From the IMG/VR virus record IMGVR_UViG_3300018424_000006, positions 155,820-219,819 of that record: a DNA stretch of 64,000 nt; one strand, 5' to 3'. Positions within the stretch are counted from its first letter, which is position 1, and every line of letters starts with the position of its first letter. Under the pieces are notes generated by a model, which was given only the letters and a program-made list of their open reading frames with translations, did no database searches and was not told the DNA's origin. A program made the position numbers and the translations under genes. Shown here piece after piece: positions 14,918 through 39,180 of this stretch.

Positions 14918-15790
14918 ATGAGTGGTAACTTTCAACCCAAGCCTCGTCCAGTGATCGAAGAACCCGGTCATGACTTAAACCCAATGGCAGAATACATGAT
15001 TGCCAGTAAAAAAGATTTGAAGCCTCATGCCACTCCGGGTGGTCAGGTTTCTGGTAACACCATGCCTGTAAATGGCCAGATGGTTAAGGTGGGCACTTTC
15101 GCAGTTATTGCTAAGTACCAAATAGGTATCCCTGCCGACCATCCTAACTTCCCAGAAGTAGCTAAGTTCGCTACTACTTTCCCAGAGAACGAATACTTCG
15201 TTGCTTGGGGTAAGTCCGGCCCTGTACCTTGGGAGAAAGATGAGTCTTTCCGTTACATCCCAACCTTCTCTCGTTATGTAGTAAACGAAGCAGGTACCGT
15301 TAAAAATGCGCATACCGGCGCTGTTGTATATGAAGACGTATTCGACAAGCGTGCTCAGTTAGTAGCTGACGGTTTCATGAATGGCCTATCTTGGGTTATG
15401 GGTAACATGATCAAGATCCTAGCATTCAGCAAACTACCTGAAACATTCACTGACTATACTTTCCAGAACTATAGCCATTCTATTGGTGTAGTGGACGGTC
15501 AATTAGGCTGGGAACCAAAACCGGTAATCTCTGCTCGTAGTAATGTTGATGGTCAGATTGTTAAATCTCGTACTGTACAAGATTTCATTACTTGCCGCAT
15601 TAAAGACTTCACTCAGAAAGGTGAGGCGCGTAAACAGATCCGTAACCTATCTTCTACCGCTGCCGTGCGCATGGGTGAGTTTAGTGTTCTTAAAGGTGAC
15701 GTTGACGACGTGACTAAGTTTGGTCCTGCTCAAGAGTCTGCTCCTGTCCCACAAGGCAATGCAAGCTTTGACAATGATCTAAGCTTCTAG
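14918..15790 (+). CDS. NUMOD4-like domain protein with acidic-aromatic C-terminal tail
   Basis: EKDESFRYIPTFSRYVVNEAGTVKNAHTG aligns with the N-terminus of the intron HNH; no HNH motif; ends SFDNDLSF. Confidence 0.75.
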   Translation: MSGNFQPKPRPVIEEPGHDLNPMAEYMIASKKDLKPHATPGGQVSGNTMPVNGQMVKVGTFAVIAKYQIGIPADHPNFPEVAKFATTFPENEYFVAWGKSGPVPWEKDESFRYIPTFSRYVVNEAGTVKNAHTGAVVYEDVFDKRAQLVADGFMNGLSWVMGNMIKILAFSKLPETFTDYTFQNYSHSIGVVDGQLGWEPKPVISARSNVDGQIVKSRTVQDFITCRIKDFTQKGEARKQIRNLSSTAAVRMGEFSVLKGDVDDVTKFGPAQESAPVPQGNASFDNDLSF

Positions 15791-33721: not shown

Positions 33722-34843
33722 TTACTCCTTAAAGTACTTTTCAGAGGCTTGTCGTGAAATCTCCATAAGTACCGCATTAACAATACCCATTATTTCAGCC
33801 GACAAAACGATACGATCCATGACGGATCGCCAACCAAAGATCATATCTATACTATCACCTTCTAGAGTCTCGTTGGTACCAGTAAGGATGCCGCCAAACA
33901 CAGTTTTTAACTGACTTGCCAAAACACCCTTATCCCCAATACCTACCCCTAGGTCTTGATCGATAAATATTTCAATTGCTACTTGACCCGGCTCCACTTT
34001 GTTGCCGGATACATAAACATTTTTATCTACATAACCACTAGTGGCCATGCCGCTACTCGTCGCTTTAACGTGTTGTGCGCGACGGCGGTCTCCCGCTTCT
34101 ACAATCTTCTTAACTGACTCAGACATGTTCTCTTTCTTAGAGCGATAAAGAACTTGTATGTCGGATACCTTACCCACAATTTTAGCTTTAGGGGCATGGT
34201 TAGAAAACTTACTTAACGCAGCTAATGCTTGTTCGTCAATAGAGTCTAAAGAAACACTACCGTCTTGGATAATACATAAAGGACTATCTAGATCAGTCTC
34301 GTCCCCAATCTTGACCATATTTAGAACATGGTCATCTTCATCAACAACAATAACTTTGCGTTTAGTATAAGCAGAACCTAGTTTCTCAGCTAAAGCAGCA
34401 CTAATCAAAGAACTATCTTCTAAGGTTCCATTACCTTCCATGAAAGCAACATTGGCAATCGCCCCAACCTTAAATGTAACGTTCTTTGGATTTAACCAAT
34501 CACGTTCGAAGTAGTCCTTGTTCCATGCAACGATATCGCCTTCTTTAACTTTGTCTCCAACTTTAAAGTCGGTAATAATTTCCTGAGGAATAGTTAAACC
34601 GCCTTGGATACCATGGTTAGTCCCAATCTTAACACCGGATGTTGAACCGTCTTTATTTTTGATGTAGACATATTCGTCAGTAATCTTTTCAATTACCCCA
34701 TCCATCTTAGCAGTATATGCAAACTCATCTGCTGTACGCGCACCAATCACCTGTTCATAACCAGTACGAAGAGGCATGGATTGATAACCCTTAGCATGAA
34801 CCATAGCAGACATCTGTACGTTCAATAAATTGGCTCTTTTTCC
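33722..34843 (-). CDS. Virion RNA polymerase beta subunit (gp178-like), exon 2
   Basis: In-frame GKRANLLNVQMSA continues exon 1 HDD, matching RpoB HDDANRALMGANMQ; also contains EDS and GDK...QLKT beta motifs. Confidence 0.88.
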   Translation of the reverse strand, partial: GKRANLLNVQMSAMVHAKGYQSMPLRTGYEQVIGARTADEFAYTAKMDGVIEKITDEYVYIKNKDGSTSGVKIGTNHGIQGGLTIPQEIITDFKVGDKVKEGDIVAWNKDYFERDWLNPKNVTFKVGAIANVAFMEGNGTLEDSSLISAALAEKLGSAYTKRKVIVVDEDDHVLNMVKIGDETDLDSPLCIIQDGSVSLDSIDEQALAALSKFSNHAPKAKIVGKVSDIQVLYRSKKENMSESVKKIVEAGDRRRAQHVKATSSGMATSGYVDKNVYVSGNKVEPGQVAIEIFIDQDLGVGIGDKGVLASQLKTVFGGILTGTNETLEGDSIDMIFGWRSVMDRIVLSAEIMGIVNAVLMEISRQASEKYFKE

Positions 34844-36375
34844 TGTTGGTATTAACTAGGTGTCGTTAGTACCTAGCCAGCAGTAATCTGCTGCTGCATG
34901 TCGCCATGCAGACTAGACCATATCTTCACCTCCAGCTTTACCTGCTGAGGTGCTCTCCGTTTCGAGTCCACTTGGACCCTACACCGTGATAAGCGGTTGG
35001 TCGTTGAACCTTGATCTTAGTCTTTCTAGACCTTAGACCCTTGGCTGCTGATTGTCTCTCACTTTACTTTTTCAAACATTCACGCTCACCGTTTCCAGTC
35101 ACGTTGTAGTAGTAAGCTTCTGAGTAGACCGGGTATGCAATTTATTAAAAATACCCGGCCCAGTTAAGCCATAACAACTTAACAGTTTCCAGCAATTAGA
35201 AGAGATTCTGACTAATCATTTCTGAATTAGCAGGACAGAATCAGTTTTAATTTCTTTGTAAATATCAGAATAGTTGTAGAACTTAAAGCCCTTCTTACGA
35301 GTTTTACCGGGACATTTGTTTATCCAGTAAGACATGGTTGTTTTACCAACCTCGAAGCTTCTAGCCGCATCAGCTAGTCTGATATAAATCCTCTCTTCAC
35401 CAGTCTCATCATTCTTGCAATAGATAGCACTATAGCCAGAACTCTTTTCGTAGTTAAGAACTGGATCATCCACAGTCTCCCATGGAGTTCCATCATCCAT
35501 CTTCAGCAAGTACAGGTTACCTTTAACAGCGAAGACTTCGAATGGATTATTTTTAATCCTAGTTGTAATGTTACTTTCCGGTAAGTCAATGGCACGTGCC
35601 GCTTCCCGGAAAGAACCATAACGCTCTATAGACCCCTTACAGTAGTCTTTTACCAGTATGGGTATCGATCTACCATAATTCTGCATTTCAAGCCGTAGTG
35701 CTTCATTAGAGGCCTTTTTCCATGGCGTTGTCGAAGTCCCGGACTTGTATAGCTTCCCTTCAGGAAAGATTTTCTGTCCGTCGCTACCTATGCGCTTCAG
35801 TAACTCGCCGCTACTCAATCCAAGTGTCTCCATTGCAATGGAGCGAAGAGGAAACTCTTCTATTTCTCCAGTGAATGGATCATAACTTATTAGAGGTGAG
35901 CGTGTACGCTTAAGTCCTGTGTCGACTGAATGTCTTACGTTCTCTTTAGCTGTACACCATTCAAGATTCTCTGCCGAATTGTCCTTAGGTAAACCATTTT
36001 TATGATTTACTTGTAAAGACTCCTTATTTGGAGTTTCTGGATAAAAGGCGGCTGCTGCTAATCGATGAAGAGCTACATGTACCTTCTTTCCGCTATCGTC
36101 AATAAAGCGGGTAGTAATGTAGCCTCTATCGTTAGGACTGACTTCCAGTAGACGACCGGTTTCTTTTACCTTAAATCTACCTTTGGCATTTACGCAATAA
36201 CGGCTAAAGTTAGGGATTTCGAAGAAGGTCTCGTCGCCCTCAACTGGTTTTGGATTAAAAATATTTCTCATTGTAATATACCTAATACTGATACATACAA
36301 TAAGATGACCTAAAATACTAACTGTACAAATTATAGATTAGGTCGCCAAAGAAATTATGAAACTAATTTTAGTTT
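34844..36375 (-). mobile_element. Group I self-splicing intron (IA2-like) with homing endonuclease ORF
   Basis: P1 GAUGAU/GUCAUC with a terminal U-G pair; P3 CUCUUC (35199-35204)/GGAGAG (34953-34958); P4 UGCUG (35190-35194)/CAGCA (35046-35050); P7 GACCA (34998-35002)/UGGUC (34916-34920); R element GUUCAACGACC, S element AAGAUAUGGUC; P9 hairpins. Confidence 0.92.
35216..36271 (-). CDS. Intron-encoded NUMOD4-HNH homing endonuclease
   Basis: NUMOD4 (IPNFSRYCVN..G), HRLAA..F, VNHKNG..DN..ENLEWCT..EN..H, and C-terminal NUMOD1-like helices (SFREAARAI, LADAARSF). Confidence 0.93.
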   Translation of the reverse strand: MRNIFNPKPVEGDETFFEIPNFSRYCVNAKGRFKVKETGRLLEVSPNDRGYITTRFIDDSGKKVHVALHRLAAAAFYPETPNKESLQVNHKNGLPKDNSAENLEWCTAKENVRHSVDTGLKRTRSPLISYDPFTGEIEEFPLRSIAMETLGLSSGELLKRIGSDGQKIFPEGKLYKSGTSTTPWKKASNEALRLEMQNYGRSIPILVKDYCKGSIERYGSFREAARAIDLPESNITTRIKNNPFEVFAVKGNLYLLKMDDGTPWETVDDPVLNYEKSSGYSAIYCKNDETGEERIYIRLADAARSFEVGKTTMSYWINKCPGKTRKKGFKFYNYSDIYKEIKTDSVLLIQK

Positions 36376-39180
36376 ATCATCGTGGTTAGTGCCCGGCATT
36401 AATAGGCCAGTGGTGGATAGCACACTACTAGAACCTTGTCCTTCTTTATAACGACTACTCACACCACGAACAGTGTCAATATTAGCGTTAGGAGAAAGAA
36501 TAGAACGAATACCTACTTTAGCACTATCTGGCGTACCTTCTGAGATAAGACCTAAGTCATTCTTATGGAAGATACGAGAACGCTTAACAAGAGTCTCTGC
36601 TGAACGACCACCCGCACCACCTAGGTTAACAGTTTCCTGTTCCTTTAAGCTGCTGATTGGATTCAGAGAACTTGCAGGAATAGTTGTTTGGTCGTTCTGG
36701 ATATCACCCATTACTGCCATTGGATTTACATCAATAGTAGCTGTCTTAGTAAACTGATTGTTCCTATGGCCACGCACACCTTCAACAAGTCTACGATACA
36801 AGGTACCAGAGAAACGCTCAATGCCACGGATACGCATGAACTCAGGATCAGTCTCATCAGGATGACGGTCGTCTTGAAGTAACTCAACCGCATAAAGCAA
36901 TAGCTCTTTATAGACAGTTGGTTGGTCTTTAGACTTTAGGATTTCTTCAGTGATTGGATCAATGAACATATCTTCCAAAAGTTCTAATTCATTTAAGTGG
37001 TAGTTACTACCGCCTAGGAATGTCATTAGAGGACCATAGCCTTCTTTACGGTTTAGCTGATCCATACGCAAAGTATGAATGGCTTTTCGTACAGGACGGA
37101 AGCCAGCATAAAGCATTGAGATCTCAGAGCGGCTAGCGTCGATAATAACCGTTTCGTCTTTAAACTTAACAGCAATTTCGTTGGCTTCAATAGGCTCACG
37201 AGAACCAGTGGCGACTATTCGGTAATTTACTTTGAGATACTTAAGTAGTTTCTCAAAACCTAGCAGATAAGAAAGAACCATAACAATAGGTACTTGCTTA
37301 TTGAAGACAGACATTACAATATGGTCACGAGGAGCAGTTCCTGCTTCAGGTAGAATGAAAGACTCTAGACGACCTTTAGACTCTGAATTACCCTTAGAAT
37401 GAAGAGTCAGTGCATTGTCCATATTGATAGTTAAGAACTCACCAGAGGAATTAGTAGCACAAACGACTACGCCATCTTTCTCTAGTTTCTTAAGTACGTC
37501 TTTACCGTACAATTCTTCACGTTTATCATAAGCAAAGTTGAATACAAACTTATTCGAAGTAAAGCCTTCTAACTTACTACCAATTGAGGAATAAGCTAGA
37601 GGTACCTTAGCTTCGATCTTCGTCATGTCGCCATAGCGAAGAGCCGTGATTGCTTTATTAGAAACGTCTAGACCAGCAGCATTGATATGCTTTAATAGCC
37701 AACGACCATAGTTATCTACAGCTTTAGGGGAACGCTTAATAAACGTCTTACCATAATAACTAGTCAGAGCAACCTTATCTGGTCCACTCTTACGAATTGG
37801 CATATCTACACGCTGAGAGTCAAACGTGTATTTAACACCACCCTTAAAGAAACGACCTTGGTCATCTAGTTTGGGGATTTGGAATTTAATAGTAGAACTC
37901 TTACCGGTAATAGGTTGAACTTTCACCGTGTATTCTAGCTGAGAATCCAGAGCATCTACAATCTCTTCCATCTGAACGTCGCGAACAATAACACCGGCAT
38001 CCTTAAGTTTAAGGAACATGTTATTTATATCACGGAACATGATGTTGTCCTGATAGTGCTTATCGAAATTACTTACTGAACTTTCCTTAATGGTAGGATC
38101 AATAATCTTATCGATAGCAGTAGGGATAGTACGAGAAACTACAGTCTCTTTAAATTCCACTTTAGAGGCTTCGCCGATAGGCTTACCAGTAATCGGGTCA
38201 GGAATAGATTCCGTAGCTTTGGCAAGTTCTATAATCTTAGCTTGCTCACGAGAAGACAATTGTCCTTCAGAACCTAGCTCAGAAACCATTTTAAGGATCT
38301 TAGGGCTAACCGCACCGTCAGCAGCCTGTTCAGTTTCTTTCTCAACTTCTAACGCAGCTGTCTCTACAAGACTCTTCTGCTCAACAAACTTCTCAAGTAC
38401 TTGATAGAAATGTTTCTGTCTAGTCTCTACTGAATCTTTATCGTCTTCATTAAAGCGGAATTGCAGAGCAGGAATCACGCTAACAAAACCAGCACCCATG
38501 AAAACAAAGTTAAGTTGCTTTAGCTGTTCCTCAGAAAGAGTAGAAAGACTACCTTTCCCTTCAATGAACAACCATAGGTCACGAAGTCCTAATGCTTCAA
38601 ATGTATGCCACTTAGTCGCATGCGTATTACTTAGCTCCTCAGTGATCATTTTAAAATCAGCAAAAGCAGGCAATACGTTTGGAAGACGATACAAAGAAAA
38701 CGTCTCACGTTCTTCCGTGGTAATCTTAATGCCCTTCAAGAACATATCGTTAATGTTACTCCATTCATAGTACGGAGTAAGGATATGGTCAGAGTAGTCG
38801 ATACCATGAGTTAGGAAACTATAATCATAAACAACTAAGTTACGACGACTATCTAAAGCTTTACCGATGTCGCGAGCACGACGTACACGTCCTTGACTAC
38901 GGAAGTAGACGGATTCCATCTTCTTGTAGTTTTGCTTCTTGCGGATGGCCTTACCTTTGGTAATTGGTAATTCAGTTTCATGAAAGACACGAACGTCTTT
39001 AGGGAAATTAACAATCATTGGATGGGAGCCCCGAATACCTAGTTCAGGACTGTCCATATCGATATAGTGCAAAGCAGAGTCTAAAGGTAGCTGGAAGTCT
39101 TTAGCTGGATGAACCTTAAGTAGGTTCAAGGCTTTGCCCGGAAGTATAGAAAACTTCTTTAAAAAGGGAGCATAAAGCAT
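36376..39180 (-). CDS. Virion RNA polymerase beta subunit (gp178-like), exon 1
   Basis: 935 codons ending ...LMPGTNHDD; contains QRVDMPIRK, VALTSYYGK, GGAGGRS and SEGTPDSAKVG motifs. Confidence 0.9.

What the first reader, a model, noticed from the sequence alone, without database searches (positions are those of the whole stretch)
34844..36375. Group I intron with HNH endonuclease at the conserved HDD motif of virion RNAP beta
A full catalytic core is present, and the insertion splits HDD|GKRA, equivalent to RpoB HDD|ANRA. An intron-encoded HNH in the virion RNAP beta gene of PhiPA3 (gp210) has been reported to cut the intron-less gp178 gene of co-infecting phiKZ. This element may be an equivalent inter-phage weapon with different specificity, and it would need import into the phage nucleus.
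Basis: partly seen in the sequence, partly recalled or inferred. Interest (0 to 1): 0.6.

Follow-up and report, generated by a model that had tools for sequence, protein, structure and literature searches.

The report
Endonuclease intron in phage polymerase gene
A self-splicing-type intron carrying a DNA-nicking enzyme interrupts an essential RNA polymerase gene of an uncultivated nucleus-forming giant phage, at the same spot and with the same enzyme family as the published PhiPA3 "intron weapon"; it is one more member of a common kind, except that its last base is A where all its relatives have the G needed for splicing.

Summary
Window 34844-36375 (minus strand) is a group I intron (Rfam RF00028, 82.8 bits, E 1.5e-19). 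It carries a 351-aa HNH endonuclease gene and splits the virion RNA polymerase beta gene right after the second Asp of NHDD|GKRA. The genome is a complete 219.8-kb chimallivirus that encodes a nuclear shell protein.

The interpretation needs correcting. This is the same insertion site as the PhiPA3 gp210 intron, and the enzyme is a full-length gp210 homologue (27-28% identity). It keeps the catalytic His in an identical VNHKNG motif and has an I-HmuI fold. The element is also common: 22 of 78 related IMG/VR phages have a group I intron at or about 10 nt from this site, with a full, decayed or absent endonuclease gene. That makes it a new member of a known kind. A weapon role, a different specificity and nuclear import remain untested.

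One anomaly is real. The reading frame and a strongly covarying P9.0 pairing put the intron's last base at A34844, whereas all 19 relatives examined end in the canonical G. P1 at the family's guide-sequence position is only 4 bp. Five assemblies (two haplotypes) carry the same junction. Whether this copy splices accurately is open, and no RNA data could be obtained.

The parts
36376..39180 (-). Exon 1 of the virion RNAP beta gene (935 codons, ending ...NHDD; last base T36376). If unspliced, the frame runs on for 6 codons to a stop at 36355-36357.
   Evidence: phrog_3148 profile positions 362-1051; tblastn to about 300 chimallivirus beta genes.
34844..36375 (-). Group I intron, 1532 nt, starting AAAC... 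and ending ...ACCAACA (terminal A34844).
   Evidence: Rfam 82.8 bits; exon boundaries; P9.0 register.
36304..36315 (-). Candidate internal guide sequence 'IGS1'. GTCATC (36309-36304) pairs with exon GATGAT, with a U36376-G36309 wobble. TTTTAG (36315-36310) pairs with intron CTAAAA (36372-36367).
   Evidence: Duplex energy -8.9 kcal/mol, the best in the intron but tied with one chance site. The position is not conserved in relatives.
35216..36271 (-). HNH homing-endonuclease gene, 351 aa, gp210 / I-HmuI type. Catalytic His90 lies in VNHKNG, with NLEW at 102-105 and N111. Its last 10 codons overlap the guide position and P2.
35234..35237 (-). TGTC at the family's conserved guide position, just 5' of P2 ('IGS2'). 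It gives only a 4-bp P1 (GAUA/UGUC).
   Evidence: Alignment A3. Duplex -2.0 kcal/mol here against -4.4 to -9.8 in 13 relatives.
35212..35230 (-). P2 hairpin (CTAATTCA GAAA TGATTAG). It contains the endonuclease stop codon.
34953..35204 (-). Core domain. P3 is 35204-35199 / 34958-34953. P4 is 35194-35189 / 35051-35046. P5 carries a window-specific insertion of about 60 nt (35186-35127). P6 is 35045-35036 / 35016-35008. The P7 5' strand GACCA is 35002-34998. P7.1 is 34997-34983 and P7.2 is 34979-34964.
   Evidence: RNAalifold on 20 introns: 37 of 45 pairs keep pairing through double changes. The window forms 40/45; I attribute the other five (in P2 and P9.1) to misalignment, because both hairpins pair when read directly from the sequence.
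34916..34952 (-). P8 (34952-34944 / 34936-27), J8/7 GAAGATA, and the P7 3' strand TGGTC (34920-34916). The G-binding G:C pair is intact.
   Evidence: P7 is 5/5 paired, with a compensatory C:G shared with L094.
34844..34915 (-). 3' domain. J7/9 is TAGT (34915-12). P9 is 34911-34894, P9.1 is 34893-34878 and P9.2 is 34876-34856. The tail TTAATACCAACA has P9.0 'AC' (34846-45) pairing with 'GT' (34913-12), and terminal A34844.
33722..34843 (-). Exon 2 of the virion RNAP beta gene (373 codons, GKRANLLNVQM...).
   Evidence: phrog_3148 profile positions 1052-1421; tblastn.

Best explanation
This is a mobile group I intron. Its P7.1/P7.2 layout matches what I recall of subgroup IA. It belongs to the lineage that includes the PhiPA3 gp210 intron and sits after the second Asp codon of the HDD motif in the single virion RNA polymerase beta gene of an uncultivated chimallivirus.

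Proposed mechanism:
1. The gene is transcribed through the intron.
2. The ribozyme core folds. Exogenous G attacks after U36376, which is paired with a guide G.
3. The exons are joined to give ...NHDD-GKRA..., restoring an essential active-site segment.
4. The intron-encoded enzyme is an extended I-HmuI-like HNH protein with three repeated beta-beta-alpha-alpha modules after the nuclease. By homology with gp210 and I-HmuI it is inferred to nick intron-less alleles of the same site in co-infecting relatives.
5. The nick leads to intron homing by recombination. Where recombination is blocked, as between separate phage nuclei, it damages the competitor.

Shown here: the anatomy, the homologies, the covarying ribozyme structure, the site identity with PhiPA3, and the chimallivirus context.

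Inferred only: splicing, nicking, homing or interference, and nuclear import.

The copy is atypical in ending in A instead of G. If it splices accurately, the 3' site must be set by P9.0 and P10 rather than by the terminal G.
For: - Ribozyme: Rfam hit. The family-wide structure covaries, 37/45 pairs with compensatory changes. P7 is intact with a compensatory change.
- P9.0: 36/38 positions pair in 19 relatives, and 0 of 10,000 shuffles reach that. In the window only the register ending at A34844 pairs 2/2.
- P10: exon-2 GGAA can pair with UUCU just 5' of the conserved guide G, in register with exon 2 starting at G34843. This is read from the sequence.
- Exons: the halves abut on phrog_3148 at 1051/1052. 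Intron-less relatives are contiguous.
- Endonuclease: full-length homologue of gp210 (E 9e-25, 94% coverage). His90 aligns with gp210 H82 in an identical VNHKNG motif. I-HmuI is matched by sequence (E 2.6e-6) and by fold (E 5.6e-11).
- Site identity: PhiPA3 locus L003 and the paper's text.
- Context: nuclear shell protein in the genome, and no second beta copy.
- Exon codon: all 16 site-A intron-bearing alleles end in GAT, against about 21 of 49 unique intron-less alleles by my hand count of the list. This fits a need for U at -1.
- Persistence: five assemblies in two haplotypes keep the same junction.
Against: - The terminal base is A34844. All 19 relatives, and the genome's own second intron, end in G. 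The G-binding G:C pair of P7 is unchanged. From established group I biochemistry, as I recall it (Michel 1989; Been and Perrotta 1991), an omega-A should ligate poorly.
- P1 at the conserved guide position is only 4 bp, -2.0 kcal/mol. The stronger alternative upstream of the ORF lies at a non-conserved position and is only marginally better than chance.
- The family's GAAGAY tail motif is missing.
- No RNA evidence could be obtained.
- No intron-less close relative was found as a target.
Confidence: 0.68

Rival explanations
1. Splicing-impaired or decaying copy. The G-to-A change at the intron's last base and the weak canonical P1 make exon ligation slow or inaccurate. If the next G (34843) docks instead, the exons join one base short (GAU|GAAAAAG), giving ...HDDEKEPIY and a stop. 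Full-length beta would then come only from rare correct ligation, or from a -1 slip of tRNA-Lys on the A5 run, which would read HDD-E-KRA.
For: Omega is A in the conserved register, while all relatives have G. The G-binding pair is unchanged. P1 at the conserved position is -2.0 kcal/mol. The 3' tail is divergent. Relatives show every stage of decay of the endonuclease gene, for example L128 and L142.
Against: This is the only virion beta gene in the genome. The KR residues just after the junction are near-invariant in the family. The core is as well kept as in relatives (82.8 bits). The same junction persists in two haplotypes across five assemblies, which argues that the phage is viable. The frameshift rescue is pure inference.
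Confidence: 0.2
2. The 3' splice site is the canonical G34856, the end of P9.2. Exon 2 would then start TTAATACC..., and the protein would carry a 4-residue insertion (HDD-LIPT-GKRA).
For: It is the only in-frame combination that keeps the conserved 5' splice site after U36376 and also ends the intron in G. The one other combination with U at -1 and a terminal G moves the 5' site to T36371 and is listed under Tried and rejected.
Against: The phrog_3148 profile and about 300 homologues have exactly one residue between DD and KR. G34856 is base-paired in P9.2. In every relative an 11-13 nt tail follows that hairpin. The P9.0 register does not fit.
Confidence: 0.05
3. Genes in pieces. The intron no longer splices, and beta works as two polypeptides: residues 1-935 plus 6 extra, and a C-terminal fragment started internally at TTG34825 or ATG34813.
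For: Chimallivirus RNAP subunits are already split at other places (recalled from the literature, not tested here). GenBank annotators call the two halves separate genes in PhiPA3, BONAISHI and 2050HW. A weak AAGAG lies 8 nt before the TTG.
Against: Any internal start would drop the conserved G-K-R-A-N-L residues at the active centre. There is no convincing ribosome-binding site. The ribozyme core is conserved and covaries across the family, which implies selection for splicing.
Confidence: 0.05

Closest known systems
PhiPA3 gp210 intron in vRNAP beta gp211/gp209 (Birkholz et al., Science 2024, PMC11620839)
   Same: Same gene family (phiKZ gp178-type virion RNAP beta). Same insertion point, after the GAT of the second conserved Asp. 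Group I ribozyme of the same alignable lineage (67.8 bits in PhiPA3). Endonuclease homologous over its full length with an identical VNHKNG catalytic motif. In both, the ORF precedes P2 and its 3' end overlaps the guide/P2 region. The host phage is nucleus-forming.
   Different: Only 27-28% protein identity. The flanking target is about 50% identical over +/-21 nt by my hand count of the list. The window intron ends in A rather than G, lacks the GAAGAT tail, has a weak P1 at the conserved guide position, and carries an extra insertion of about 60 nt in P5. The host is uncultivated; its nearest cultivated kin are Vibrio phages at about 42% identity. None of the PhiPA3 experiments (nicking, import, competition) exists for it.
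I-HmuI, the HNH nicking endonuclease of the Bacillus phage SPO1 DNA polymerase intron (PDB 1U3E)
   Same: It is the only solved structure matched, both by sequence and by fold. It covers the N-terminal beta-sheet, the HNH motif, helices and helix-turn-helix of residues 1-175.
   Different: The window protein is twice as long, with two further beta-beta-alpha-alpha modules. The host gene and the target differ.
ORF-less introns at the same site: Pseudomonas phage 201phi2-1 (L126, 336 nt) and metagenomic L094 and L096
   Same: Same site and same ribozyme lineage. L094 shares the window's P7 C:G pair and has a near-identical P9. 201phi2-1 has the same J7/9 TAGT and the same 'AC' before the terminal base.
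   Different: They have no endonuclease gene and they end in the canonical G.
L092, the closest relative found (228-kb ENA contig, 55% identity in exon 2)
   Same: Same synteny, same site, a 326-aa gp210-type ORF, and a ribozyme scoring 87.6 bits.
   Different: Canonical P1 of 7 bp at the conserved guide position, a GAAGAT tail and a terminal G.

Membership tests
Group I intron (Rfam RF00028) | Covariance-model score above the curated threshold | tested here: met
   82.8 bits against 50, E 1.5e-19, full model 1-253.
Group I intron (Rfam RF00028) | Conserved core helices P3-P8, with the P3/P7 pseudoknot and a G-binding G:C pair in P7 | tested here: met
   The window forms 40/45 consensus pairs; I attribute the other five (in P2 and P9.1) to misalignment, because both hairpins pair when read from the sequence. 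P7 is 5/5, GACCA/UGGUC, with the G:C pair kept.
Group I intron (Rfam RF00028) | U at the last exon position, paired with G of an internal guide sequence (P1) | tested here: inconclusive
   U36376 is present and can wobble-pair with G at two places. The conserved position gives only 4 bp (-2.0 kcal/mol). An upstream site gives 12 bp (-8.9 kcal/mol) but is tied with a chance site.
Group I intron (Rfam RF00028) | G as the 3'-terminal nucleotide (omega-G) | tested here: not met
   In the register fixed by the reading frame, the protein profile and P9.0, the last base is A34844. All 19 relatives, and the genome's second intron, have G. This lowers confidence in normal splicing, not in the element's ancestry.
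Group I intron (Rfam RF00028) | Self-splicing that joins the exons | not testable with these tools
gp210 / I-HmuI-type intron HNH endonuclease | Full-length homology to PhiPA3 gp210, with the catalytic His (gp210 H82) and the HNH Asn residues | tested here: met
   tblastn E 9e-25 at 94% coverage. H90, N102 and N111 are invariant in alignments A2 and A4.
gp210 / I-HmuI-type intron HNH endonuclease | I-HmuI-like fold | tested here: met
   Model pLDDT 81. Foldseek finds 1U3E at E 5.6e-11, probability 1.00, with no other match at E <= 0.001.
gp210 / I-HmuI-type intron HNH endonuclease | Encoded in an intron at the DD| site of the virion RNAP beta gene | tested here: met
   and the paper text.
gp210 / I-HmuI-type intron HNH endonuclease | Nicks the intron-less allele, is imported into the phage nucleus, and gives a competitive advantage | not testable with these tools
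   Needs biochemistry and a cultivated phage-host pair.
Chimallivirus virion RNAP beta (phiKZ gp178 type) | Homology across both halves to the gp178-type profile, gp178-type synteny, and a nuclear shell protein in the genome | tested here: met
   phrog_3148 at E 6.8e-236 and 2.8e-126. The neighbouring beta' matches phrog_2986 and the head maturation protease matches phrog_3014. The shell protein matches phrog_4795 at E 7e-34. Virion packaging itself was not tested.

The most novel reading that the evidence does not exclude
A natural group I intron in an essential, single-copy phage gene ends in A instead of the otherwise universal G, and the phage lineage persists in at least five assemblies. 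If the exons are nevertheless joined accurately, 3' splice-site choice here is governed by P9.0/P10 with a non-G terminal nucleotide in an ordinary G-binding pocket. Alternatively, expression depends on recoding at the A5 run. Either would be an unusual natural exception to group I rules.
Probability: 0.3. Interest if true: 0.6.

Novelty: new member of a known kind. Interest (0 to 1): 0.35.

Why it matters
It shows that the PhiPA3-type intron endonuclease is not a Pseudomonas-phage curiosity. It belongs to a widespread lineage of introns that repeatedly occupy the HDD-x-KR active-site segment of the chimallivirus virion polymerase gene, in about a quarter of the related metagenomic phages sampled. 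The same genome also has a second intron with its own HNH gene in the non-virion polymerase beta' gene. Polymerase active-site codons therefore look like a general battleground for such elements in nucleus-forming phages. For this particular copy, the practical value is as a natural test case of how much a group I ribozyme depends on its terminal G.

Tried and rejected
Splicing and any G/A polymorphism at 34844 could not be checked.
- Assembly error at the 3' junction: rejected. Two IMG/VR contigs are identical over 7 kb. A JGI contig and an ENA contig differ by one synonymous SNP elsewhere. A gapped pattern scan of metagenome contigs found only the two-G form.
- 5' splice site after T36371 with 3' site after G34842 (HDDKLKRA, +1 residue): rejected. 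The local hairpin pairs that U with A rather than G. By alignment the intron start AAAC matches L096, the genome's second intron and the FishSpeaker intron. The profile allows only one residue between DD and KR.
- A long-range helix enclosing the ORF (36297-36284 with about 35271-35259): not significant. 7.7% of shuffles reach its energy, and other ORF windows score better.
- Chimallin by BLAST or first-look search with the FishSpeaker protein: nothing found. The PHROG profile found it.
- Intron-less allele of this phage or a close relative (degenerate HDDGKRANL pattern in IMG/VR): none found.
- Single-protein locus search with exon 2 found only identical copies. An alignment was needed.
- A first regex census of junctions was too brittle and was replaced by tblastn.
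- The joined exon1+exon2 protein was not searched or folded.

Full report
**1. What is there**

On the minus strand, ORF 36355..39180 encodes 935 residues ending ...TGLLMPGTNHDD. It then runs six more codons (KLKLVS) to a stop. The frame that continues the protein opens after a TAG and reads ...GKRANLLNVQMSAMV... from G34843. Between the two lie 1532 nt. Rfam's group I model matches 34894-35259 (-) over its whole length at 82.8 bits (cut-off 50, E 1.5e-19). It is the only Rfam hit in the window. ORF 35216..36271 (-) encodes a 351-aa HNH_3 protein.

The two protein halves match the gp178-type 'RNA polymerase beta subunit' profile phrog_3148 at positions 362-1051 and 1052-1421, so they abut. In tblastn, three Vibrio phages (Yong MS32, sm033, pir03) run contiguously through exactly this junction. 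BONAISHI and C-ZP2022 have gaps of 515 and 1439 nt there.

**2. Context**

The window is bases 155820-219819 of a 219,819-bp IMG/VR virus record with terminal repeats, scored complete.
- The genome encodes a nuclear shell protein (phrog_4795, E 7e-34), so it is a chimallivirus.
- Beside the interrupted gene lie a gp180-type beta' gene (phrog_2986, with GADFDGD intact) and, downstream, the head maturation protease. This is the arrangement seen around the PhiPA3 and phiKZ virion polymerase genes.
- No second copy of this beta gene exists in the genome.
- The nearest cultivated relatives are Vibrio jumbo phages at about 42% identity. The nearest sequence of any kind is a 228-kb ENA contig at 55% identity in exon 2.

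**3. Relation to the published PhiPA3 element**

[quoted passage not shown] It also states that phiKZ escape mutations fall in D1072 of gp178, and that purified gp210 nicks the intron-less sites. That is the same position as here.
- In the PhiPA3 record, exon 1 ends AACGATGAT, the intron ends ...CTCG, and exon 2 starts ATGAAACGC.
- The window's enzyme matches gp210 over 94% of its length (E 9e-25, 27.6% identity).
- In alignments of 8 and 10 homologues, His90 sits in the same VNHKNG motif as gp210 H82, the residue whose mutation abolishes nicking. N102-L-E-W and N111 are invariant.
- The only solved structure matched is I-HmuI, by sequence (E 2.6e-6) and by fold (AlphaFold model pLDDT 81; Foldseek E 5.6e-11).
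- The model shows the I-HmuI-like part, which ends in one beta-beta-alpha-alpha module, followed by two more such modules.

**4. How common this is**

An alignment-based scan of IMG/VR returned 78 related beta genes besides two identical copies.
- 56 are uninterrupted and 22 are interrupted.
- The interruption lies either right after DD (site A) or about 10 nt downstream, after DDxKRV (site B).
- All 18 interrupted loci tested carry Rfam-scoring group I introns. One has three introns.
- The endonuclease gene is full-length in some (330-390 aa), truncated or decayed in others (L128, L142), and absent in others. Phage 201phi2-1, with a 336-nt intron, is one of the ORF-less cases.
- A protein search for exon-2-sized ORFs found 75 clusters.
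- GenBank phages of Serratia, Pectobacterium, Klebsiella, Raoultella and Vibrio carry gp210-type genes in the same place.

This is a populous family, and the window adds one member.

**5. The ribozyme**

I aligned 20 introns: 18 at or within 3 nt of site A, plus two from beta' genes.
- RNAalifold recovers P2, P3, P4, P6, P7.1, P8, P9.1 and P9.2. In 37 of 45 pairs at least one sequence keeps the pair through changes on both sides.
- The window forms 40 of the 45. The other five lie in P2 and P9.1, and I attribute them to misalignment, because both hairpins pair when read directly from the sequence.
- P7 is 5/5 in all 20. The window and L094 share a compensatory C:G (GACCA/UGGUC against GACUA/UAGUC), and the G:C pair that forms the guanosine pocket is intact.
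- The helix order P7-P7.1-P7.2-P3' matches subgroup IA as I recall it. I did not test the subgroup.
- The window has a private insertion of about 60 nt in P5, with two hairpins.

**6. The splice sites**

*5' side.* All 16 site-A alleles with introns end in GAT. About half of the intron-less alleles use GAC. The window's intron starts AAAC, like L096, the FishSpeaker intron and the genome's own second intron.

In the relatives, P1 is formed by exon GAU plus the first 4-9 intron bases pairing with the stretch just 5' of a conserved GUCC that precedes P2. The endonuclease gene therefore lies inside the P1 loop. The energies are -4.4 to -9.8 kcal/mol, and the intron's 5' end covaries with that stretch.

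In the window that position offers only GAUA/UGUC (-2.0 kcal/mol). A better partner lies upstream of the ORF: GTCATC plus TTTTAG at 36315-36304, 12 bp, -8.9 kcal/mol. One unrelated site in the core scores the same, so this is suggestive and no more. Either way the cleavage site is after U36376.

*3' side.* Every relative ends in G directly before the codon that follows DD. In the window the base before GGA is A34844. I found a two-base pairing, P9.0, between the two bases preceding the terminal nucleotide and bases 3-4 of J7/9. It covaries across the family (AC/GU, UC/GA, AA/UU, AG/CU, UA/UA, UU/AA). It pairs at 36 of 38 positions in register, against 12-22 when shifted, and 0 of 10,000 shuffles reach 36.

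In the window only the register with A34844 as terminal base pairs 2/2. This is AC with GU, exactly as in 201phi2-1, which has ...CAC-G where the window has ...AAC-A. G34843 as terminal base pairs 0/2. Exon-2 GGAA can also pair with UUCU next to the conserved guide G, in that same register.

The family's GAAGAY tail motif is also replaced.

This is not an assembly artefact. Two IMG/VR contigs are identical over 7 kb. A JGI contig and an ENA contig differ only by a synonymous SNP at 34482. A gapped pattern scan found no three-G variant.

**7. What the anomaly means**

From established group I biochemistry, which I recall rather than tested, the terminal G docks in the P7 pocket for exon ligation, and changing it to A blocks that step unless the pocket pair is changed too. 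On that basis this copy should ligate poorly at the in-frame site.

If G34843 docked instead, the message would be one base short and would stop after HDDEKEPIY. A -1 slip on the A5 run would restore KRA, but that is speculation.

Set against this, the gene is single-copy. The K-R residues just downstream are nearly invariant. The core is as well preserved as in relatives. The lineage persists in two haplotypes. I therefore rate accurate, possibly slow, splicing as the most likely outcome, with an impaired or decaying intron as the main rival.

**8.

Homing or interference by nicking intron-less alleles is a reasonable transfer from gp210 and I-HmuI, because the enzyme is intact and orthologous in position.
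- 'Different specificity' is plausible. The cognate sites share ACGATGAT but are about 50% identical over +/-21 nt by my hand count of the list, and the enzymes are 27% identical. It remains untested.
- No intron-less close relative of this phage was found. The closest relative has its own intron.
- Nuclear import cannot be addressed. The paper shows that import, not cleavage ability, decided the outcome between PhiPA3 and phiKZ.

**9. Procedure notes**

The exons were searched separately by reference. The joined protein was not built, searched or folded. 

**Verdict**

This is a new member of the PhiPA3-type intron-endonuclease family, with an unexplained non-canonical 3' terminal base.

Noticed in passing
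Outside the window: G000:C1:147743-149002 (locus L002 1450-2709, minus strand): A second group I intron in the same genome (Rfam 74.3 bits) with its own 272-aa HNH gene. It splits the beta' gene next to the nuclear shell protein gene (phrog_2987) inside the catalytic NAD|FDGDQM motif. It has a 6-bp P1 (GCAGAU/GUCUGC), a GAAGAT tail and a canonical terminal G. Shewanella phage FishSpeaker has an ORF-less intron 6 nt (two codons) further downstream in the same motif, at NSDFDG|DQM, in the homologous gene.
   Followed up: partly
window 35076-35120 (minus strand, P5 region): 35-45 nt of the P5 extension (…CTACAACGTGACTGGAAACGGTGAGCGTGAATG…) are 94-100% identical to a stretch in Shewanella phage FishSpeaker, where it lies in the beta' intron. 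They also match unannotated stretches of eight Enterococcus phages. This looks like a widely shared peripheral module.
   Followed up: partly
window 35127-35186 (minus strand): An insertion of about 60 nt in P5, absent from all 19 aligned relatives. It has two hairpins, one with a 10-bp G+C-rich stem (35160-35151 / 35136-35127).
   Followed up: no
Loci L117 and L175 (IMG/VR relatives): L117 has three Rfam-scoring group I introns in one beta gene, two of them back to back at sites A and B. L175 has an extra intron about 2.5 kb upstream. L128 keeps only a 208-aa remnant of the endonuclease gene. L142 has a 1.1-kb intron with no ORF over 47 aa. Together these show stages of the gain, decay and loss cycle.
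   Followed up: partly
Exon side of the junction across loci: All 16 intron-bearing site-A alleles use GAT for the second Asp. Intron-less alleles use GAC in roughly half of cases (about 26 of 49 unique sequences by eye). This fits a need for U at the splice site, or co-conversion, but the counts are not phylogenetically independent.
   Followed up: partly
window 35219; ENA contig ERZ27313169 k141_353956 (L180): This 5-kb contig starts exactly at the last sense codon of the endonuclease gene, in the P2 loop. This could be chance, or an assembly-graph branch caused by variants with and without the ORF.
   Followed up: no
window 14918-15790 (+): A 290-aa ORF contains a 36-residue stretch (…FRYIPTFSRYVVNEAGTV…) that is 50% identical to the N-terminal DNA-binding strand region of the intron endonuclease, without an HNH motif.
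   Followed up: no
BONAISHI (L005) and phiKp_32 (L007): Related introns sit 3 nt (HDDG|KR) and 10 nt (DDPKRS|L) downstream of the DD| site. At least three neighbouring insertion points are therefore used within this one motif.
   Followed up: partly
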